This document shows positions 41,744 through 62,971 of a stretch of DNA of 64,000 bases, in pieces. Within the stretch, counting starts at the first letter, position 1. Each line of letters begins with the position of its first letter. This stretch comes from Diadema antillarum (taxonomy: Eukaryota), in assembly GCF_040938485.1 (NCBI RefSeq), contig NW_027271175.1:1302001-1366000 (forward strand), read 5' to 3'. The notes under the pieces are model-generated. The model had not been told where the DNA came from, ran no database searches, and saw only the letters and a program-made list of their open reading frames with translations. The position numbers were made by a program, and so were the translations under genes.

Positions 41744-44700
41744 ATGTCGCTGGACACGAAAGGAGTCAAAGGTGTGGCCAGATTGACATCTGAGATGGCA
41801 GAAACTTGTACGGGACATGGACAAGGTCCAGAAATCCATGCTTCGCCGAGACGCGGTCTAAACGATGAAGCTCTGGACATTCGCGCATGCGGTCTAGAAC
41901 CTCACCAACGAGTCCACCTCAAGGCCCATGTGTACACAGAGTCAGGCAAATACCGATTTGAGTCAACCGCCGAATATCGGGCAGATGCCAATGGGGAGAT
42001 CAAAGGTGAGAGGTTGATAACTGAGGTCACTTCTGGACGTCATGAAAAATTCAAGTACCGTTCATTATACGTTCTGCATTCCTTGGTTTATGTATAGGCC
42101 CATTCTTTTTTACACTTCATCTAATGAATCACAACAGACATTTTCCTCTTCTGCATGTAATTACAGAAGCTTTAACGTATACGTTCGATGAGAATTCGCT
42201 TTGTTGACACTTACATGATTAAAGGTTGATTTCTTTATGGCGAGAAGGTAAGGACGTTAGATGGTAAGAAGGCGACTTACAAAACTTGCCAAGGCGCCAA
42301 AAGGCCCCTGGCTGAGTTTTTTACCGAAATATACTCTCCCCTTCTAGTCCTGCGGAAGGCGCATCGGTGAGATTGAGCTACAGTCGTTTCGGCTTGAAGA
42401 CAAGTTTTGAGAAGTCGCTTCTTCGTCCTCTCATGAGGGAAAAGGTGTCTACCCATCACTTACAACATATCACATTTTGTCCTCTTCCTCGTTGGTAGTG
42501 GCGGAGGACCCTTCTCTAGGTGGGAGCTACACTGGAGTAGAGCCGATGGGTCTGATATGGAGTCTCGAGCCAGCCCCCGAAATCGCTCATAAGTACCCGC
42601 GTCTTATTAAGCGTGACATCAAGAGGCCGTTCGCCTTCACCTTCGAGCTGGTGGACGAGAGGAAGACGGTGTTGTCGTCGACGTCGGTTGAAAGGACGTA
42701 TCTCGCTGACTACGTTGAGAGACAGCTGATCAACCATGGCGTTGCCGAAGGTTGTCTGTATTTGCCGAAGAAAAAGGGTAAGGGCAATCAATGCCATGCA
42801 GATAATAAATCAAATCAAATCAAATCAAATCAAATCAAATCAAATCAAATCAAGTCAAATCAATAGTTAACGAATATAACATCCTGGTTCACAAAGCCTG
42901 GTTTTGTGTTTCGTTCCCGTATTCCCAGTGTATTTCTATTCACTCTCACAACCTAGAAAGTTAACGAGCCATATAGCACATTCCATATGCTGGCCCATTT
43001 TTCGTGGGTTCTTTTTCGCATGAGTAGCATTATTGGTCCTGTATGAGAAAATGTTCACGAATGCATTGAAGGATAATGATGCACCTTTGGAGAGTTCCAT
43101 GCAGGGTAGAGTAACGAAGAATGGTGGAGACAATGGTGTGCTGCTTTGGATAATCAGCAAAAGAAAATGATATGATGGCTCAAGGTTTGTCCGACATTTC
43201 AGTACATAATGCGTGAAAACTACATTATGTTTTATACTTACGCTTTCAATGCAATTCAAACTTTATTTTCCTTTTTATTCAACAGAGTGTATAATTGATA
43301 TGTGAAATTTGACATGCGTGTTGTTGAAACACAGCCAGCCAGAAATAACATGTTCATGTCTATATTATAATCAGTACAAAAAGAGATATACAATCGTATT
43401 TATACACTCTGTGAAAAAATGGAAGTATACCCACTCAAAAGACTATGTTTTTATTATGTGGGTAACTCAGAGGGAAGGGGGAAGAGGGGAGGGGTGAAAA
43501 GCTGACAAAGAGTGGCGGAAAGTGAGGAAAGAGGGAATAGAAAAATAAAATAAAATAGGTTATGCTTGAAACGTGTAGGTAAGTGGAAAACAAATTGTCA
43601 GGCTCTATATTGTTCAAAGGAGGAATACACAGATTGCAAGGAGCGTAATGTTTGTATATTTGGTGAGTTGGGTTATTGTCACGTTGGTTTTGTGCGATCA
43701 GGTTCGTCCGACCCACTGCCTGTCATCTTGGACGTTAGGGGCGGGGTGCCTTTCCTCGTAGAAGACAGACCATCCCTGATGGCGTCCCATGGTTTCGCCA
43801 CAATTTCCATCAACTACTTCCTCAAGCTCATGGACAAGAAGATTGTCATGAACAAGGCCAAGTACTTCGATCTTCAGATTTTTCTGGTGCGAGACCATAT
43901 TGCGGGGAATTTTGAATATTCTTTGAATTCTTTATGCCGAGGAATGATAAGTCAGTAAAGTTTATGATGATGACGATGGCATGAATGATAATCACGATGA
44001 TGATACTTATATGAGTGTGATAATGATAATGATAATAATAATGGTAATAGATAATGATAATAATAATCGTCATCATTCTAGTATAAACCCTTAATTGTTA
44101 CTAAGTTGATGGGAGATGATGAAATGAAAAATACAGCAGTATGTAAATACGTAAAAATAAGTAAACAACAACAACAGCTGCTGCGAATCTAGCAGAGAAT
44201 ATTCAATGGAGTTGTATGTATTTGCGGATTATGGTTAAAATCTTTGGCAATCGCAATGTCACCGAAATTACGACACTGTCGTATTCGGCATCTCTGACGC
44301 AATCAATTAAGAGCAAAACTGATACACAAAACAGCCTAATTTGTGGTCATTATCCATAGAATATGAGTTTTCACATACTCACAACACTCCCAAACCTCAT
44401 GATACGTAATTATCGTGATATTTTGCTTTTATTTAGTGTTTTACATAAGAATGAAAAAATCTTCTTCATGATTTACACAACTCATCTAAAAATAGAGGTT
44501 GGAAACTTGAAGCCCATTCTCAACCACAACTATATCATCCCTTTAAGTAACCACCAACAAAACTCAAGATAAACCATTGATTGGCTTTCATCACGTTACA
44601 TCGAGTGTAATGACAATCTTATAAGTTAGTGATAATGTTTAAGAACATGAATAGAATCTTATGTTCATGGAGTCAGGACTTAATTAGGACAGTGTAATGT

Positions 44701-47700
44701 CTGCGGGTATGATATACATACACGTATCGTCAGCAGAATAACCTTTCATTAACTATAAAATTATAGAGCTGGCATAATTATTATGTATTGTTCGGAAGTC
44801 ACGTACACGAGAGAAGAATTCTAATTTTCTCGTCTCAAGGATTAACATTCGAATGAGATCAGTGCTTTCCGTGTCGATCATAAAGATTTTTATCGATTTA
44901 AAAAGCAACATACCGGTTCTCTAACCCATTAAAACTTGCATGGATAAACGAATAACCGAATCTGTTTTGTTATCGTTTGTTTTAATTTATCTGCTTATCG
45001 TCAGCACTCTCAATACTTAATTCATCTTGCCTCCCCTCTCCTTTTTCTACATAAACATTGTTATTATTCTCCTTCATCCTCGTCATCCTCGTCTTCTCCT
45101 TTCATCATCAAAATCTGTTTCTACCCTTCTCCCATTCATCATCAACATCTTATCCTATTAACCTCCTTGTCTGTTTGGGTGCGCGTCACGAGACCGACAC
45201 CCACGAGCCATACAGCCCACGAGTCATACAGCCCACGAGTTATACAGCTCACAAGTCTTACAGCCCATGAGTTCAACACTAAGCTAACAAGGCCCACGAG
45301 ACCGACACATTAAGCCCCGTGTTGTATCTGTCGAACCCGTGGGCTGTTTTTACCTAGTGTCGAACTCATGAGCCTTATTTAATTGCCTATAGTCTCAAAC
45401 TCATGGGCCGCACGACTCGTGAGCTGTATGATTCATGGACCTGTTTTCAATTTGTCGAACTCATGGGCTGTATTTCTCTATGGGTGTCGGTCTCGTGGGA
45501 TGACCCCGGCTGTTTTCGCCTCATCTCTTTTACCCCCGTCTTCGATTCTTCGTGTATCGCAGGACATCTTTGATTTCATAGCAAAGCACCCTCGACTGGA
45601 CGTCAACCGCGTCGCCGTCGCATCGTCCTGTCTCGGCGGGGTCCTGAGCCTCTCCGCCGCCGCCTGGCTGAACGTGCCGATAAGATGCTTGACGGCCACG
45701 GGCTGTGTGGATCTGCTGGCGTACGAAATTGGCCTCAGGTTACCCGACGGCAAGCTGATCGAGCCATACGAGTGAGTCATCCTATTTTGTCGGGAAGATG
45801 TGTTTCTGTTGCTGTTTTTATTGAAATATCGCTAACTTTTCAATTGTTCAATAGGTTTTTTTTTGTCGATAGTACTGTACTGTTTTTGTTATATTTTCTA
45901 TGATCATATCATTATTGTTATTATTATTATTAATATTATTATCATTATCACCTGCCATCATTATCATACTTGTTACCCGCGTTATCATCGTCGTCATAAT
46001 CATTGCTGATAAGTTTCTTTTATGGTTATTGTGGAATTCTTTCAATTTCTTCGCCAACACTTAGGGAATGGGCATGGTCATGAACAATTACAGGAAATAG
46101 CGCGACCCATCAAGCCGATAATATGCAGTTAGATTACTGTGCCTTTGAAGCCATAATTATGATTATGTAGGTGAAACTGAAAGTGCGGCCAACCGCTCTT
46201 AACGTGGGCTGTTTTGAAGAGGAGACACGGTTTACCAACAGGAAAGCTCAACTGAACAAATCATAATAAGATTATAGAAATTTAGCAATCTTCAGCAGGA
46301 AAATGTAAACATCACACATGCACACACGATACGACACAAAACAAACAATTATTGAAACTTAAACAGACACTAGCAGTCGAAGGGATGAATGGGTACATAA
46401 GTATATTATCAACAAAGAGAGTGAATCTATGAAGAACGAATGAATCAATTTTCCAATGATTGAATGAATGAATAAATAGAGAATGAATGAGTAAATGAAT
46501 GAATGACCTAAAAACCAATCTACACAATGATTGATGGTTAATTAAAGATACATCTGAATAGTGATTTTGTCTACTGTGTATATAGGGTTGTTTATTTCCA
46601 CTTAGTTAGGTTTCAGTATATCAATTACATGTATTTTGTTGTATTACGTGTGGGGGCATGCACCCTATACAAGCACATTGATTTTTTAGCATTCCTCCCC
46701 ATTTCCAGCATTTCCGTAGAACATACTTTCAATATTTATTTTGCAAACTTATACATTTCCTTTATTATACATTGTGATGTAATTTATGCATTCATTTTTC
46801 TTAGATATTTATGTTTCTGCTGAAAATGGAAGAAAGCCTGAATGAATGAATAAATGAATGAAAATGTTTCTTGCCGTGAATTCATTATCTAGCTCGAGGG
46901 CGCACTATGAAGTAGTGGAGAAGGATGGTACTTATGTCTGGCAGCTGGAGAGTTTTGACGCTTTCGACAATCTTGAAGGAGATTTCATCATACCGGTATG
47001 CCATGGATTTTGTGAAACCCTCTTTTCACCCCCCCCCCCCCCCCCCCCGCCTCGGCAGATTGTTTTGTTGTTGTTGTTTTTTTGTCAGATTTTGTTACGT
47101 GTTATTCGCATCGTTTATCCTAAAAATCATTTTAATTTCGATTTGCTCTTTCCCCCAAATCCTATACGGGTATGGGGGGGGGGGGGGGGGGGTGCCTTAA
47201 ACCGAAAATGGGAACGGAAAGAGTGGTTTTTGATGCCGGATATTCTACGCTGGTCATCCTTGTTCCGATTCCTTAATAGGAGCTCGTATACGATAGGCAT
47301 TCGATATAGCCATACCATAAATGTTGCTGTGCTTTTGTATTAAAGTGTGTTTGTCTTGTATTTCCGTGTTTACTGTCCTGTCTGTGTTATTTCTAATTAC
47401 TTTATAATATTTTCCTCTGCTTAATGGTTTATGTCGATTGCATGAATTGTCCAAAGTGATTGTTCTTTAGGTATAGACGTCGCTCCCTCAGTGTTTTCCC
47501 TCAAACCTTGGATAATGTAACTAGTTTGATATGAAACTATGTACAACGTGTGTATACATGCTTTCAATTCGTTGATTACCTCGATCCTATTTTATCATAC
47601 AGTCCATTATTGTGTACTCAAGATCATTCGTAATTGTCTTGATCTAATGTTATGTTCTGCGGAAGAGGAAAAATTGAAATTAAGTAAGTTGATCCGTAAT

Positions 47701-49672
47701 GCCTGTATGCAGAATGGGGATACTAGGAATGAACATCCGTCTCTCATCTTGATATGGAACATTATTCTTCTGCTGGAATATTTTTGCTGTAAAATGACGG
47801 AGCAAATCCTGGTCGAAAGATTGGTTGAGAGCGCCACACGTGATCGTGCATTTGTTTTGCCTAACACGTGGTTTTGCTTGTCGTGACCGGCCATTAGCAC
47901 ATGCCAACGTCGCGATGGTGATCGTGCGAGCTTTCATCATTTTATTTACTAGTACTCTGCGAAATTCAAAGGGACTACATTTGAAATTCTTTCGACGACA
48001 AGTATCTGTTTCTTCATTTTATAAAACAAATACTGCACGTGACATTTTTTTTTCGGGTTATACATACCCACACTCGGTATCTTCGAAACAGTCTAACGAA
48101 CGCTCTCGGCTATCACCACACTCACAAACACACACGATCCTTTCTCGTATCAGTCGAGAGAATTAGCCGGTAAATCCAAATAGCAAATATAACTTGAGAT
48201 CAGGTGTTGTTGCTTTTTTTTTCTTTCTCTCTTTGTGTTGATATAGGTGGAGAGAATAAAGTGCCCAATGGTGTTTTTCACAGTTGGAGACGACCAATAC
48301 ATTCCGATCATATAAACGGATGATGAAGGTATAGCGGGAATGAACGAAGTCTCTTCTATTCTTTGCTTGCCAATAGGCCCTACTACTGACTCTACCTTTT
48401 TTTTCATATTTCTCAACAAGAATGGCATAATGAATAATATGATTGATACACACCACGAGAGGAAGGGATAGATCAAATTGCTTATTCAATCCAAGTGAAA
48501 TAATCACCATAATAATGGTAATCCGCAGGTTATTATGTGTCTGTTTCAATTAGGTTAATAGATTTTTTAATCCACTGGGAAAAGGATAAGCATGGTAAAA
48601 GTGGTGATAGTTAATTCAACATAATGGGATCTCGACCTCTTCCGATCGTCTTCAGTGTACATTATGCTTTGAGTATCTAACTGTCACAATGATAATGTAT
48701 TTTGCAACAACCCTCCTCCCCCCCCCCCCCCGAAAAAGGACATTGAACAACAACAGCCAAAATAATAAAATCATAGTAATAGTAATAATTATTACTATCA
48801 TAACCCAAAGGTAAGACAGTCCAGTCGTTTGGGATAAAACACGCCAAATCTATCCTCATCCTATTTATATTGACTATGTTCTTTGTTCTCCAACTACTCG
48901 TGAAAGATGAAGGAACGGATAGAAAAGGCGGGGAATGGACACCTGTTGGAAGTCGTTCATCTCGAAGGGGCGGGCCATTTCATAGATGCCCCGTACCTTC
49001 CTCTCTGCCGACAAGCCAATATGGACCCCAACCTTCCCTATCGTAAGTTGATACGCATCATACGCACGAGCATATAAAACAAGAGAGAGTCGTATACATT
49101 AGTTTTGTATAACCCTTTCGAAGTCACTGTCATACGATGCCACTGGTATTGGAAGCAGACAGAGTTCCGCGTCTATGACCAATTGCAGAGTCTCCTTGCG
49201 TTTATTTTCATCAAGAGGTGACAAAAACATTATAATTTCTTCGCGATAACATTGCAGGCAATGTCAATTATCTCTATTTGCGCCTGCAAGACATATTTAT
49301 GTTTCATGAAAGATCGTAATAAATAATGATGATTAATTGATTTCAGTGAACCGTGAAATAAAGGGGTCAAAGCGGCAATGCAGCAAATGGGACTATACTT
49401 TTTCACAAGATGACAGATTTTTTTTTCATCAGGGAAATTTATGTTACCTCTGTTTTGCTTTCGTAAAACACGACAAAGCTCTTTTGTCTGTCCTCGCAGC
49501 GGTCAATGGAGTGTTTGGAGGCGAGCCGCAGCAACACGCTTACGGAATCAGCGCAGCTTGGAGAAAGACTATCAATTATTTCCGGGATCAGCTGAATGTC
49601 ACAGAGGTCTACAGACCAGATTGGCTGGATGATCACAGCAAGAGCCGCCCCACGCTGACCTCTCGCCTTTGA
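41744..49672 (+). CDS. Type I acyl-CoA thioesterase / bile acid-CoA:amino acid N-acyltransferase (ACOT/BAAT) family protein, peroxisomal; join(41744..42005,42499..42777,43702..43886,45563..45771,46893..46995,48247..48328,48907..49042,49500..49672); about 475 aa if the one extra base in exon 6 is removed
   Basis: N-domain YRADANGEIK|VAEDPSLGGSYTGVEPMGLIWSLEP; PVILDVRGG...SLMASHGFATISINYF; nucleophile elbow VAVASSCLGG; FIIP|VERIKCPMVFFTVGDD (Asp); GAGHFIDAPYLPLC (His); FGGEPQQHAYGISAAWRK; ends -SRL*. All junctions are GT-AG and phase-consistent except exon 6 (82 nt between two phase-0 junctions; TAA at 48313-48315), so this allele may be non-functional or mis-assembled. Confidence 0.9.
42807..42862. 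repeat. (AAATC)n tandem repeat, possibly a retrotransposon tail, 30 nt into ACOT/BAAT intron 2
   Basis: About 11 AAATC units preceded by aataa. Confidence 0.85.
45177..45507. mobile_element. GG-terminal element with 16-nt subterminal arrays (copy 2, compact 331 bp) in ACOT/BAAT intron 3
   Basis: gggtgcgcgtcacgagaccgacaccca...gggtgtcggtctcgtgggatgacccc; TSD gtctgttt/ggctgttt (7 of 8). Ends 55 nt before the exon 4 start. Confidence 0.8.
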
Positions 49673-50537
49673 CCTCGTCTGATGCCTTCGGGACCAGCAC
49701 AATTATTATAATATAAGCCTATTTTTTTTATGAAGATTATATCATGACAGTGAAGAAGAAAGTAAGCCGTGTATGAAAAACAGAAATTAGCGTATGTGAA
49801 ATTTTGTCTAGTTTTCTATCTGAATTGTGAAAAGTAAGCAGAAAACACATATTTTTTATTGCAAACTTGTTATCACTATAACAGACGCCTAACAGGAAGT
49901 GATAAGAATTGATACAGATTATTGTATCGCCGAGGGTGTCGGTAATGATAGATACGGCGCATTATGTATGTTTATTGTAATTCCTTATTTGCATAGACCC
50001 ACTTTTGTTAGTTTTGTTTTTGTTCAGTCCTCTCTACAGTTAACCACCAGATTGATGATGCAACAAAATGATTATGAAAAACATGCTTACTTCTTCTCAA
50101 GTTTTACCCTGCACACTTAAAATACAATTCCACATCATTATTCAAGTTGACTGCAGTTATTATCATAGACGAATGTGTTGGGGGCAGTTTCATGTGAAAC
50201 GGAACAATAGTTATGGATTTTCAAAGGTTTGAATGTTTTCACTGAATAGTGATATTAGTCGCATCCTTCTCGGGTATTCACAATGTTATGTTACACTATA
50301 CCCTTGAGTGCGCCTGCATCTCGACTATTGCCCTCTCACTTATGCATCATTTTTTCCAAACAATACACCAGGCATTTGCCTTCTTATAGTGATTATATAC
50401 TCCATGAACATATTGTGAAAGTTGTTTCTCTTACACTGTGCAGGGTAAGCAATCATAGTAAATCATCTGAGAATGTACCGTTATAGTAAATCCAAGCCAT
50501 GTTGGTCATGCTATGCTCGTGATGTGTTGAGTTACAC

Positions 50538-52215: not shown

Positions 52216-52356
52216 NNNNNNNNNNNNNNNNNNNNNNNNNNNNNNNNNNNNNNNNNNNNNNNNNNNNNNNNNNNNNNNNNNNNNNNNNNNNNNNNNNNNN
52301 NNNNNNNNNNNNNNNNNNNNNNNNNNNNNNNNNNNNNNNNNNNNNNNNNNNNNNNN
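52216..52356. other. Assembly gap (141 N)
   Basis: Run of N; true length unknown. Confidence 1.
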
Positions 52357-53523: not shown

Positions 53524-55997
53524 CCCCCTCCCCCCATCCCCCGGACACTTTAAAAACCTACCGATACAACTTTTACCCCTGGGGAGTAAAAATTTGACCA
53601 AATCTTCATTTACCCAGTTAAGTATCATGATGCAGGAAGACTAGGATGTACATTGATGGTTATTATTGTCATCATCAGCAATGTAGTATTGCATCAACAA
53701 GATTCTGAATGATAAAATTCTGCTTGACTATTGTTTTCCAGGCACCCTGCTTTTTGTTTTTAATGGGAGGGGTCAGCTCATATACTATATCGTACAGACA
53801 TGTCCAAGCAAGGAGCATGTGATTGGCTAATTGTGACGATTTGACGCTATTTTTGGAACATCACCGAAGCCCCCGTACGCGCGTCAGTATAAAAAGAACT
53901 TGCTGGATATTGCTCCGTAAGAAATGCGTTGCTTTTCGGGCTGGAAACTACGTACACGTACTCCATGGTAAGTTGAATGCACGTCGTCGCGTGCGCACTT
54001 CTTTCGTAGGTGAACGCACGTACGTGAAGTAGCGCTCTACGATCTCTATTTCTGGCTTTGCTTTGCTACCTGTTCCTATTAGTTCCTGATGGATATAGGC
54101 GCGCGATGCTCACATTATCAAGTATTGTATGTAGCTATCGATGGGGCGATGAAGAAGAAGACTCGACTTAGTGCATGCATTAGTATACACGCAAAATATG
54201 CACGCAAAATATCAAATACATAGAGGAAAATACTTCAAGCAATCCTACTACCTGGTAGCTAGTAATGAATCAGTAACTGGATTCGATTATCAAACGCTAC
54301 CCTGATTGTCTCCACACGGATGGTATGTATATCGGTAGTTTCAAGAAAGAGTATAGGTCTAGATTAGGTGATTTCCAAGTGACAATGCGTCATCTCTAGT
54401 GTGGAAGGGCAAGTCCCTTTCTTCAGTCCCACGTACGATTCTAGATGTCAGAACAAACAGGGGTCTTCAATAAGTTACAGTAGTCGTGCTCGTGTTACAA
54501 CAGTTAATGTATAAATGCTCTACAATGTATACTGTTAAAAATTTACTGTTTACTGTGTGTCTGTGCTGCATGCTACTGTGGCTGTGGTGATCTTTCCTTC
54601 TGCAATTATGTCTAGAGTCTACTTGATGAACGTTGTAAATATAGTGAGGTGCCGGTGCCCGCACCTCGTCCTCGTCAGGGGGCCCGAATACCGTCACCCC
54701 GCTTAAAATTGTTTTATAGGCGCACTAAACAAAAATTTATGCCCGGGACTGTGTTCAGTATGCTTGAAACTTGGCAGGGCTACCACAACCAAGCAAATTA
54801 TGGTGAAGACCGAACAGTTTTTCGCGAAAATGTGAAATTTTAATCGGAATACGTGTTATAACTTATGTATCATCACTGTCCCCGCACGCATCTTTTACTG
54901 TAATATAGAGATACTGGTATCAATATGGGAGCATCATGGTCACGCACACGTCTTTTCCATGCTTTGTCTATTGGAGCGTGGGTGACGAGTTGTGGGCCCC
55001 TTCCTTAGCGCGCAACTTTTTAGCATCGTTCGCGGTTGACGACGATAGCTGCAAATTTTCGATATTGTCAGTGAACTTGTGATTCCATTGGAATTTTCAG
55101 CATTTTTCCTGTATGTGAGTTGAATTTCAAGGAATTTCAGTGGCGAAATGTGATTCAAATATGCGCAAACGCTAACTATGACGAGGTGCGGGTCACCCAA
55201 GTATACATGGTGTAAAATTTACGTGTAGTTTGTACTGATTTCCTGACATCTGTGGGCCTAGTAGGCCTATAAAGTTTATAGTATGCGAACATTTTATTGT
55301 ATTGGTAATTATTTGTTTGTTGGAAATGAAATAATTAAATCAACTTGAACTTGAACATTTGTTATTTGTTTTCATTCTCCATTTGGGAACGGAAAGACTT
55401 CCTTCCGTCCAAACTAGAAAATTTTTCCACATTTGTGGGTAAACTTGGCCTTTGCCACAGATCACAGCACACAGTGAGACATCAGACAATATTTAGATTG
55501 GCAAGTAGATTCTAGTCCTGCTTTATATGGGGGGGGGGGAGCATAGAGAAGTCTCGCCTACATTCGTAGATAAACAAGATGGTTTGATAGCCCATAATAA
55601 TCAGTACGAGCTGGTTTTCCATAAGGTCCAGTTTCATGTAGCCATGTTGGATGTACTTGGGGGCCATGTGGGCATGGCACAGATGGCTGGACCATTGACC
55701 GTCCGACCACTACCACTAGGCCCTATACTCCACCAGCCCAGGTTACCGGTTATATAATGTATCATGACGTGTATGCTCTTTGCGATGAATAAATGAAGCG
55801 GGAAAAGTGACATTTCTGTCAATTGATATGCTACAACTTCAAATTGTGGATATTTACTGGTGTAGTATAGAACTAACATTAGTAGTACATAGTAGCACTT
55901 GAGAATAATGAACAGTTGTCATTTCCTTTTTTATGTAGATCACAAACGGGATGCCATCGTAATTGTCTTTGAGGAGAGCTGAACCACTGCCATCAAC

Positions 55998-62971
<6,974 letters not shown>

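What the first reader, a model, noticed from the sequence alone, without database searches (positions are those of the whole stretch)
45611..45640. BAAT-type cysteine nucleophile (S-S-C-L-G) in an invertebrate ACOT/BAAT enzyme
Seen: the nucleophile elbow reads VAVASSCLGG (TGT at 45629-45631), with Asp (GDD, exon 6) and His (GAGHF, exon 7) completing a triad. Known (from memory): type I ACOT hydrolases have G-x-S-x-G, while human BAAT has S-V-C-Q-G (Cys235), and its Cys-to-Ser change shifts activity from N-acyl transfer toward hydrolysis. Both the Ser at -2 and the Cys match BAAT. Inference: a peroxisomal acyl-CoA:amino acid (taurine/glycine) N-acyltransferase in an animal without classical bile acids, either a pre-vertebrate origin of BAAT chemistry or convergence. 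I recall reports of N-acyl taurines and taurine-amidated steroids from echinoderms, which would need such an enzyme; this needs verifying. Caveat: some Ser-type members (mouse Acnat1) also transfer, so the residue is suggestive, not decisive.
Basis: partly seen in the sequence, partly recalled or inferred. Interest (0 to 1): 0.75.

Follow-up and report, generated by a model that had tools for sequence, protein, structure and literature searches.

The report
Sea-urchin BAAT-like enzyme with catalytic cysteine
A sea-urchin gene of the acyl-CoA thioesterase / bile-acid-conjugating enzyme family carries a catalytic cysteine where most relatives have serine, as do nearly all its sea-urchin relatives; this makes it a good but untested candidate for the enzyme that makes N-acyl taurines in these animals.

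Summary
The window comes from the sea urchin Diadema antillarum. On its + strand (41744-49672) lies an 8-exon gene of the type-I ACOT/BAAT family. Exon 4 reads V-A-V-A-S-S-C-L-G-G, with Cys265 encoded by TGT at 45629-45631. That Cys aligns with the nucleophile Ser of human ACOT2. Asp361/362, His397 and a C-terminal -SRL follow.

RefSeq already lists the gene as "LOW QUALITY PROTEIN: ACNAT1-like", because this contig has one extra base in exon 6 (48306/7) that creates a stop. The allelic contig and the D. setosum orthologue are intact. Contigs of three public runs lack the extra base, and one of them is spliced, so it comes from mRNA. dN/dS is 0.16-0.28.

Cys is found in 25 of 26 sea-urchin family members, which form one well-supported clade on a long stem. 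Cnidarian, mollusc, tunicate, bacterial and most vertebrate relatives have Ser. The Cys therefore most likely arose independently of amniote BAAT, although I could not obtain a tetrapod BAAT sequence to test this.

A transferase function (N-acyl taurine or glycine synthesis) is plausible but unproven. Published work shows that Cys versus Ser predicts poorly what BAAT enzymes do. I found no paper that describes these sea-urchin proteins.

The parts
41744..42005 (+). Exon 1 (ATG at 41744): start of the N-terminal Bile_Hydr_Trans domain
   Evidence: Pfam PF04775, E 6.5e-09. 100% match to P0081 residues 1-87. GT donor.
42499..42777 (+). Exon 2: rest of the Bile_Hydr_Trans domain
   Evidence: Pfam PF04775, E 8.4e-20. 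AG/GT borders.
43702..43886 (+). Exon 3: start of the alpha/beta-hydrolase domain (SSDPLPVILDVRGG...)
   Evidence: tblastn with P0001 and P0020. AG/GT borders.
45563..45771 (+). Exon 4: the nucleophile exon, with elbow S-S-C-L-G at 45623-45637
   Evidence: The exhaustive HMMER search with this exon finds only sea-urchin-like proteins. RNA contig X3 record 18 covers 45562-45666 with 0 differences.
45629..45631 (+). TGT = Cys265, the catalytic nucleophile position
   Evidence: Aligns with the nucleophile Ser of ACOT2 3hlk. Lies at the strand/helix junction of the model. Invariant in 20 sea-urchin sequences.
45686..45688 (+). TGC = Cys284, a second invariant cysteine (P-I-R-C)
   Evidence: Invariant in alignment A1. 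Shared with Ciona and the teleost acot19-like clade; Ala in other groups.
46893..46995 (+). Exon 5
   Evidence: AG/GT borders. Joined to exons 6-8 in spliced contig X3 record 20.
48247..48328 (+). Exon 6: 82 nt here against 81 nt in the allelic contig and in D. setosum. It holds G-D-D (Asp361/362 at 48289-48294).
48306..48307 (+). One extra base (frameshift). As assembled the frame ends at TAA after residue 368, before His397 and the PTS1.
   Evidence: Window ATTCCGATCA against L002 ATTCCATCA. One letter is 'left out' at 48306 in every contig of runs X1, X2 and X3 that covers it. RefSeq flags the product as LOW QUALITY PROTEIN.
48907..49042 (+). Exon 7: G-A-G-H-F, His397 = CAT 48976-48978
   Evidence: Pfam BAAT_C, E 3.6e-06. 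Aligns with E-T-G-H of ACOT2. Coordinates.
49500..49672 (+). Exon 8, ending -S-R-L (49661-49669) and TGA: a PTS1-type peroxisomal signal
   Evidence: Pfam BAAT_C, E 1.6e-04. Coordinates. Orthologues end -SRL, -SKL or -SRM, while other sea-urchin paralogues have no such end.

Best explanation
The window holds one allele of a real, expressed and conserved Diadema antillarum gene (RefSeq XP_071493410.1; the intact allele is XP_071486798.1). It encodes a probably peroxisomal (-SRL) two-domain enzyme of the type-I ACOT/BAAT family whose triad is Cys265-Asp361/362-His397.

Proposed mechanism. His and Asp activate Cys265, which attacks the thioester of an acyl-CoA. CoA leaves and an acyl-S-enzyme thioester remains. 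An amine acceptor (taurine or glycine) then attacks that intermediate and releases an N-acyl amino acid. This makes the enzyme an acyl-CoA:amino acid N-acyltransferase working like BAAT, with fatty acyl-CoAs as the likely donors, and with hydrolysis as a side reaction.

What is shown: family, fold, triad positions, the Cys, its conservation, purifying selection, splicing and expression, and the C-terminal tripeptide.
What is inferred: acyl transfer rather than hydrolysis, the acceptor, the acyl donor and the peroxisomal location.

The Cys was most likely acquired once, on the long stem of a sea-urchin-specific radiation of at least four paralogue lineages, independently of amniote BAAT. The frameshift in this contig is either a private null allele or a consensus error. 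It is not a property of the gene.
For: Family and fold: (TM 0.85 to ACOT2/ACOT4). Cys at the elbow. Cys is invariant in 20 aligned sea-urchin proteins and present in 25 of 26 in the tree set. Each of the four main subclades contains both Diadema and camarodont species, so the Cys has been kept since before those lineages split. dN/dS is 0.16-0.28. The spliced contig X3 record 20 joins exons 5-8 without the extra base, and record 18 covers the Cys codon. The allelic contig L002 is colinear at 97.6% identity and intact, and D. setosum is intact. All biochemically characterised Cys-type members of the family are transferases. BAAT is also the NEM-sensitive hepatic N-acyl taurine synthase (PMC10470208), its C235S mutant gains hydrolase activity (PMC6934887), and a search in four ungulates found no type-I ACOT thioesterase with an active-site Cys (PMC6934887). 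A matching product class is known from a sea urchin (N-acyl taurine, pmid 20460699, cited in PMC13745590).
Against: There is no enzymology for any sea-urchin member. Across mammals Cys versus Ser predicts poorly which amino acid BAAT/BAATP1 conjugates, and Ser enzymes (ACNAT1, and the BAAT of pig and cow) also transfer (PMC6934887). Cys-His-Asp alpha/beta-hydrolases that only hydrolyse do exist (dienelactone hydrolase; from general knowledge). Isolated Cys variants appear among otherwise Ser-type teleost acot19-like proteins (4 of about 120), so the switch can be near-neutral. Three sea-urchin paralogues keep Cys but have lost the Asp. The window copy itself, as assembled, cannot make a complete enzyme.
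Confidence: 0.5

Rival explanations
1. The enzyme is a cysteine-type acyl-CoA thioesterase. The acyl-S-enzyme intermediate is resolved by water, and the protein does the ordinary job of a peroxisomal type-I ACOT (releasing free fatty or dicarboxylic acids and CoA). Cys would simply be the sea-urchin lineage's version of the nucleophile.
For: Most of the family are hydrolases, and the closest solved structures are ACOT2 and ACOT4. No Ser-type family member turned up in sea urchins apart from the truncated P0015, so some Cys-type paralogue may have to supply type-I thioesterase activity. The residue is a poor functional predictor (PMC6934887). Cys appears sporadically in teleost acot19-like proteins.
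Against: The characterised Cys-type members are transferases, and the Ser mutant of BAAT is the better hydrolase (PMC6934887). Strict retention of Cys across at least four old paralogue lineages contrasts with the frequent Cys/Ser flips in mammals and suggests that the thiol is needed.
Confidence: 0.3
2. The feature in this window is a dead gene copy: a frameshifted pseudogene whose elbow sequence has no functional meaning.
For: As assembled, exon 6 has one extra base and the frame stops after residue 368, before His397 and the PTS1. RefSeq marks the product LOW QUALITY PROTEIN.
Against: This is the only defect. All splice sites are GT-AG. dN/dS against the intact allele is 0.16. No contig of three runs shows the extra base, including X2 record 11, which otherwise differs from the window by only two letters, and a spliced RNA contig. 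The allelic contig and D. setosum are intact. At most it is a young null allele or an assembly error, and the locus is functional in the species.
Confidence: 0.08
3. The enzyme is a Cys-dependent acyltransferase with a different acceptor or donor from BAAT. Examples would be transfer to another amine, thiol or hydroxyl compound, or use of steroid or branched-chain acyl-CoAs, with the paralogue radiation reflecting diversified substrates.
For: The sea-urchin clade has a long stem branch (1.23 changes per column) and at least four diverged paralogue lineages, only one of which has a PTS1. The elbow exon is so diverged that Pfam BAAT_C and the PDB ACOT sequences do not match it on its own.
Against: There is no positive evidence for any particular substrate. 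The only matching natural products documented here are taurine amides (pmid 20460699 and pmid 31326449, cited in PMC13745590 and PMC7281419).
Confidence: 0.12

Closest known systems
[quoted passage not shown]
   Same: Same Pfam architecture, with a Cys nucleophile plus Asp and His at the family's triad positions. Both are peroxisomal proteins. BAAT also makes N-acyl taurines from fatty acyl-CoAs (PMC10470208), which is the activity proposed here.
   Different: The sea-urchin proteins form their own clade on a long stem, and the Cys is most likely an independent gain. Sea urchins are not known to make bile acids (general knowledge). Identity to the vertebrate family members found here is about 26-33%. 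No BAAT sequence was available, so the relation is untested.
Mouse ACNAT1/ACNAT2 (= BAATP1 lineage), the name RefSeq gives this gene
   Same: Same family; peroxisomal; a taurine-conjugating acyltransferase acting on fatty acyl-CoAs.
   Different: ACNATs use an active-site Ser and resist NEM (PMC10470208). They arose by tandem duplication of BAAT before placental mammals and marsupials split (PMC6934887), so the sea-urchin gene cannot be their orthologue. The RefSeq name reflects best-hit similarity only.
Human ACOT2 and ACOT4 (PDB 3hlk, 3k2i), type-I acyl-CoA thioesterases
   Same: Best matches by sequence (E 1.9e-45 and 2.8e-42) and by fold (TM 0.85). Same two-domain build, with Asp and His motifs aligned. 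ACOT4 is peroxisomal.
   Different: They have a G-x-S-x-G serine nucleophile and are hydrolases. The ACOT1-6-type clade excludes the sea-urchin proteins with SH-aLRT 100. They have Ala where the sea-urchin proteins have Cys284.
Teleost acot19-like / 'BAAT-like' proteins
   Same: In the tree they group weakly with the sea-urchin clade and Ciona (SH-aLRT 86). They share the second cysteine (Cys284 position). A few members have Cys at the elbow (P0035, P0095, P0121, P0160).
   Different: About 97% have Ser (G-L-S-F/L-G). Their function is unknown, and fish are reported to lack a BAAT orthologue (PMC8919083). Vertebrate monophyly is not rejected (p-AU 0.25), so the grouping is unsure.
Dienelactone hydrolase (Pfam DLH, Cys-His-Asp alpha/beta-hydrolase)
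   Same: Same fold class with a Cys nucleophile at the elbow. DLH (PF01738) is among the precomputed Pfam hits for several sea-urchin paralogues.
   Different: It is a single-domain hydrolase of lactones, not an acyl-CoA enzyme, and it lacks the Bile_Hydr_Trans N-domain. It matters only as proof that Cys does not by itself imply transfer (general knowledge).

Membership tests
Type-I ACOT/BAAT family (Pfam Bile_Hydr_Trans + BAAT_C) | N-terminal Bile_Hydr_Trans (PF04775) domain | tested here: met
   Exons 1 and 2 match with E 6.5e-09 and 8.4e-20, above the curated cut-off.
Type-I ACOT/BAAT family (Pfam Bile_Hydr_Trans + BAAT_C) | C-terminal BAAT_C (PF08840) alpha/beta-hydrolase domain and overall fold | tested here: met
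   Exons 7 and 8 match BAAT_C. Full-length P0020 matches ACOT2 and ACOT4 at E 1.9e-45 and 2.8e-42. The model has TM 0.85 to 3hlk and 3k2i.
Type-I ACOT/BAAT family (Pfam Bile_Hydr_Trans + BAAT_C) | Nucleophile-Asp-His triad at the family's positions, with the nucleophile on a strand-turn-helix elbow | tested here: met
   Cys265, Asp361/362 and His397 align with the G-I-S-K-G, Q-D-D and T-G-H motifs of ACOT2. Cys265 lies at the junction of strand 254-264 and helix 265-277. The three-dimensional geometry of the triad could not be measured.
ACOT1-6-type thioesterases | G-x-S-x-G serine nucleophile | tested here: not met
   The elbow reads S-S-C-L-G.
ACOT1-6-type thioesterases | Placement inside the vertebrate ACOT1-6 clade | tested here: not met
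   The mammal, reptile and fish-acot4 clade has SH-aLRT 100 and excludes all sea-urchin rows.
BAAT/BAATP1 (ACNAT) N-acyltransferases | Active-site Cys (or Ser) with Asp and His, as in human Cys235/Asp328/His362 | tested here: met
   Cys265, Asp361/362 and His397. The human residues are taken from PMC6934887.
BAAT/BAATP1 (ACNAT) N-acyltransferases | Orthology or clade membership with amniote BAAT | tested here: inconclusive
   None of the three large searches returned a tetrapod BAAT sequence, and none is in the PDB by sequence. The sea-urchin clade stands apart from every vertebrate row sampled. Its sister group is unresolved (SH-aLRT 86; p-AU 0.25).
BAAT/BAATP1 (ACNAT) N-acyltransferases | Acyl-CoA:taurine/glycine N-acyltransferase activity | not testable with these tools
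   This needs enzyme assays. Only indirect support exists: the Cys, and N-acyl taurine reported from a sea urchin (pmid 20460699, cited in PMC13745590).
BAAT/BAATP1 (ACNAT) N-acyltransferases | Peroxisomal targeting signal at the C-terminus | tested here: met
   The protein ends -S-R-L (49661-49669). Orthologues end -SRL, -SKL or -SRM. Actual localisation was not tested.

The most novel reading that the evidence does not exclude
Sea urchins converted their whole type-I ACOT/BAAT family from a serine to a cysteine nucleophile once, on the stem of the lineage, and then expanded it into several paralogue lines, one of them peroxisomal. On this reading the family became a set of N-acyl amino acid / N-acyl taurine synthases that arose independently of vertebrate BAAT. 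It would be the missing biosynthetic route to the N-acyl taurines found in sea urchins, and a natural replicate of the thioesterase-to-transferase switch.
Probability: 0.3. Interest if true: 0.7.

Novelty: new member of a known kind. Interest (0 to 1): 0.45.

Why it matters
The enzymes that make N-acyl taurines and related lipids outside mammals are unknown, and even in mammals BAAT was identified as the liver synthase only in 2023 (PMC10470208). A sea-urchin clade in which the catalytic Cys has been kept in nearly every member provides a concrete candidate that can be expressed and assayed. It also offers an independent evolutionary replicate for asking what a Cys nucleophile does in this fold, a question that mammalian comparisons left open (PMC6934887). 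If the proteins turn out to be plain thioesterases, that too is informative: it would show that Cys is compatible with long-term hydrolase function in this family.

Tried and rejected
1. The elbow exon alone against Pfam and the PDB gave no significant match. The exon is too diverged, and only full-length comparison places the Cys.

2. Attempts to get tetrapod BAAT/ACNAT sequences for the tree failed. The search with the Cys-type Solea protein P0035 returned only teleost acot19-like proteins. The profile of 20 sea-urchin proteins returned sea urchins and then fish. The PDB holds no BAAT by sequence. The convergence claim therefore rests on outgroup states plus published BAAT history.

3. No starfish, sea-cucumber, crinoid, brittle-star, hemichordate or amphioxus homologue was returned by any search. 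The word-limited searches, and the 70-residue query of the exhaustive one, cannot show absence, so the age of the Cys beyond Echinoidea is unknown.

4. A synteny test of the Arapaima 'BAAT-like' gene for the MRPL50 neighbour of amniote BAAT failed. The neighbouring 147-aa gene is a decayed ACOT-like fragment.

5. The ESM Atlas look-up gave only generic ACOT clusters.

6. The pseudogene reading was rejected for the locus.

7. The reads tool returned assembled contigs only, so allele frequencies at 48306 could not be measured.

8. I did not fill or look up the N run at 52216-52356.
Full report
**What is in the window.** The + strand between 41744 and 49672 carries an 8-exon gene. The exons are 41744-42005, 42499-42777, 43702-43886, 45563-45771, 46893-46995, 48247-48328, 48907-49042 and 49500-49672. 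All introns have GT-AG borders. Exons 1-2 match Pfam Bile_Hydr_Trans and exons 7-8 match BAAT_C. [quoted passage not shown] The window therefore comes from that sea urchin, and the gene is already annotated, named by similarity only.

**The observation.** Positions 45611-45640 read V-A-V-A-S-S-C-L-G-G, with Cys265 = TGT at 45629-45631.
- In a HMMER alignment with human ACOT2 (3hlk), Cys265 falls on the Ser of G-I-S-K-G, G-D-D (48286-48294) on Q-D-D, and G-A-G-H (His397, 48976-48978) on E-T-G-H.
- An AlphaFold2 model of the intact allele has pLDDT 84.8 and pTM 0.84. It places Cys265 exactly between strand 254-264 and helix 265-277, which is the nucleophile elbow.
- The best structural matches of the model are ACOT2 and ACOT4, with TM 0.85.
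- The protein ends -S-R-L, a PTS1-type tripeptide.

**The frameshift.** Exon 6 is 82 nt here and 81 nt elsewhere. The window reads ATTCCGATCA where the second D. antillarum contig (L002) reads ATTCCATCA. As assembled, the frame ends ...DDQYIPII-stop after residue 368, before His397 and the PTS1.

L002 is colinear with the window over 24 kb at 97.6% identity, so the two contigs are allelic haplotigs. L002 and the D. setosum orthologue (L001) both have an intact 1428-nt coding sequence.

I laid the contigs of four public runs on 45400-49800.
- Every contig of X1, X2 and X3 that covers 48306 lacks the extra base. This includes X2 record 11, which otherwise differs from the window by only two letters.
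- X3 record 20 is a 572-nt spliced contig that joins 46893-46994, 48246-48325, 48904-49042 and 49500-49701. It is therefore mRNA, confirms exons 5-8 and shows expression of an intact frame.
- X3 record 18 covers 45562-45666 without a difference, so the Cys codon is transcribed.

The extra base is a private null allele or a consensus error. Contigs cannot tell which.

**Selection.** Nei-Gojobori dN/dS is 0.16 between window and L002 (dS 0.04), 0.22 between window and D. setosum (dS 0.13), and 0.28 between L002 and D. setosum. This indicates purifying selection. The five elbow codons are identical in all three sequences.

**Relatives.**
- An exhaustive HMMER search of 1.84 billion representative proteins with the 70-residue elbow exon gave only 17 hits, and all named full-length ones are sea urchins.
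- A word-based search with the S. purpuratus orthologue, and a profile search with 20 sea-urchin proteins, found about 25 sea-urchin clusters (Strongylocentrotus, Lytechinus, Diadema). In the profile search these score 443 bits or more; the scores then drop to 286 bits or less for fish, followed by cnidarians and bacteria.
- In the alignment of 20 sea-urchin proteins Cys265 is invariant. Of the 26 in the tree set, 25 have Cys, with elbows S-S-C, S-A-C, C-S-C, T-S-C and G-x-C. The one exception is P0015 (G-S-S-F-G), a truncated 328-aa model.
- Nematostella, Dendronephthya, Haliotis, Littorina, Ciona, all bacteria, and the mammalian, reptilian and most fish members have Ser.
- Among about 120 teleost acot19-like proteins, 4 have Cys.

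**Tree.** I built an IQ-TREE of 67 rows with the LG+C20 PMSF model and a short search.
- The sea-urchin proteins form one clade (SH-aLRT 100) on a stem of 1.23 changes per column.
- The clade has four starred subclades, and each contains both Diadema and camarodont species. The duplications, and the Cys, therefore predate that split.
- The ACOT1-6-type vertebrate clade (SH-aLRT 100) excludes the sea-urchin proteins.
- The sea-urchin clade groups weakly with Ciona and the teleost acot19/"BAAT-like" clade (SH-aLRT 86). Vertebrate monophyly is not rejected (p-AU 0.25), so the sister group is open.
- The tree needs five Ser/Cys changes: one on the sea-urchin stem, one reversal and about three in fish.
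- Only the window's subfamily has a PTS1-like end (-SRL, -SKL or -SRM).

**What the literature adds.**
- PMC6934887: human BAAT uses Cys235, Asp328 and His362 and forms a covalent acyl-Cys intermediate. The C235S mutant keeps taurine conjugation, loses most glycine conjugation and gains hydrolase activity.
- PMC6934887 also shows that the amniote ancestor had Cys, that mammals switched between Cys and Ser at least 12 times, and that the residue predicts the conjugation pattern poorly. No type-I ACOT thioesterase with an active-site Cys was found in the four ungulates searched.
- PMC10470208: BAAT is the NEM-sensitive hepatic N-acyl taurine synthase. ACNAT1/2 have Ser and resist NEM. N-acyl taurines occur in sea urchins (Zhou et al. 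2010, pmid 20460699, also cited in PMC13745590).
- PMC7281419 cites taurine-amidated polyhydroxysteroids from the starfish Asterias microdiscus (pmid 31326449).
- PMC8919083 reports that fish lack a BAAT orthologue.
- Searches combining sea urchin with ACNAT, BAAT or amino acid N-acyltransferase found no paper on these sea-urchin proteins.

**Interpretation.** It is shown that this is a conserved, expressed, probably peroxisomal type-I ACOT/BAAT-family enzyme with a Cys-Asp-His triad, and that the Cys is a fixed feature of a sea-urchin-specific radiation.

It is inferred that the acyl-S-Cys intermediate is resolved by an amine, giving N-acyl taurine or glycine synthesis. The grounds are these:
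- All characterised Cys-type members are transferases.
- The Ser mutant of BAAT is the better hydrolase.
- The Cys is strictly retained here, unlike in mammals.
- The product class exists in sea urchins.

I put this at about 0.5. A Cys-type thioesterase is at about 0.3, another acceptor or donor at about 0.12, and a dead copy at under 0.1 (the last for this contig only). The outgroup states point to an independent Ser-to-Cys change, which needs a single base change from most Ser codons.

**Limits.** The tree has no tetrapod BAAT/BAATP1 sequence and no non-echinoid ambulacrarian sequence. The tree was a short search. The reads were contigs, not raw reads. The triad geometry could not be measured.

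**Verdict.** The gene is a new (annotated but undescribed) member of a known enzyme kind, and it carries a lineage-wide cysteine that makes a specific, cheap biochemical test worthwhile.

Noticed in passing
window 45686-45688 (Cys284, motif P-I-R-C): A second cysteine lies 19 residues after the nucleophile. It is invariant in all 26 sea-urchin family members and shared with Ciona and 10 of 11 teleost acot19/BAAT-like proteins. ACOT1-6-type, mollusc, cnidarian and bacterial members have Ala (one reptile row has Val). It may be a shared derived character of a deuterostome sub-lineage, or functionally linked to the active site.
   Followed up: partly
window 45400-45546, 46576-46722, 47164-47310, 48634-48780 (introns): These are very high-copy repeats. 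Summed contig depth in run X1 reaches about 22,000 and 3,300 at the first two places and about 260-300 at the other two, against about 15-20 for the exons. The first holds tandem-like GTCGAACTCATGGGCTGT units.
   Followed up: no
window 42808-42860: An (AATCA)n microsatellite lies just downstream of the exon 2 donor. In frame it reads as SNQIK repeats, but it is intronic.
   Followed up: no
L002 23647-25263, against window about 53548: The allelic D. antillarum contig carries a reverse-transcriptase (RVT_1) element that the window haplotype lacks. Otherwise the two contigs are colinear at 97.6% identity.
   Followed up: partly
window about 55500-58800; L001 25073-28357: A protein-kinase gene lies downstream of the ACOT/BAAT-like gene in both D. 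antillarum and D. setosum, so the gene order is conserved. Other first-stage notes call it ERK5.
   Followed up: partly
Proteins P0016, P0029, P0030 (Diadema paralogues): These paralogues keep the elbow Cys (C-S-C-V-G), but G-D-D is replaced by G-A-E-D and the G-x-G-H motif is altered (A-T-T-H or A-T-G-R). They may be non-catalytic or may work differently.
   Followed up: no
L003 5639-7634 (- strand), Arapaima gigas: The 147-aa gene called next to the Arapaima 'BAAT-like' gene is a decayed fragment of another ACOT/BAAT-family gene, not MRPL50.
   Followed up: partly
Teleost proteins P0035, P0095, P0121, P0160: These are isolated Cys-nucleophile variants (G-N-C-F-G, G-L-C-F-G, G-F-C-V-G) within an otherwise Ser-type teleost acot19-like expansion. 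They look like further independent Ser-to-Cys switches in a group reported to lack BAAT.
   Followed up: partly
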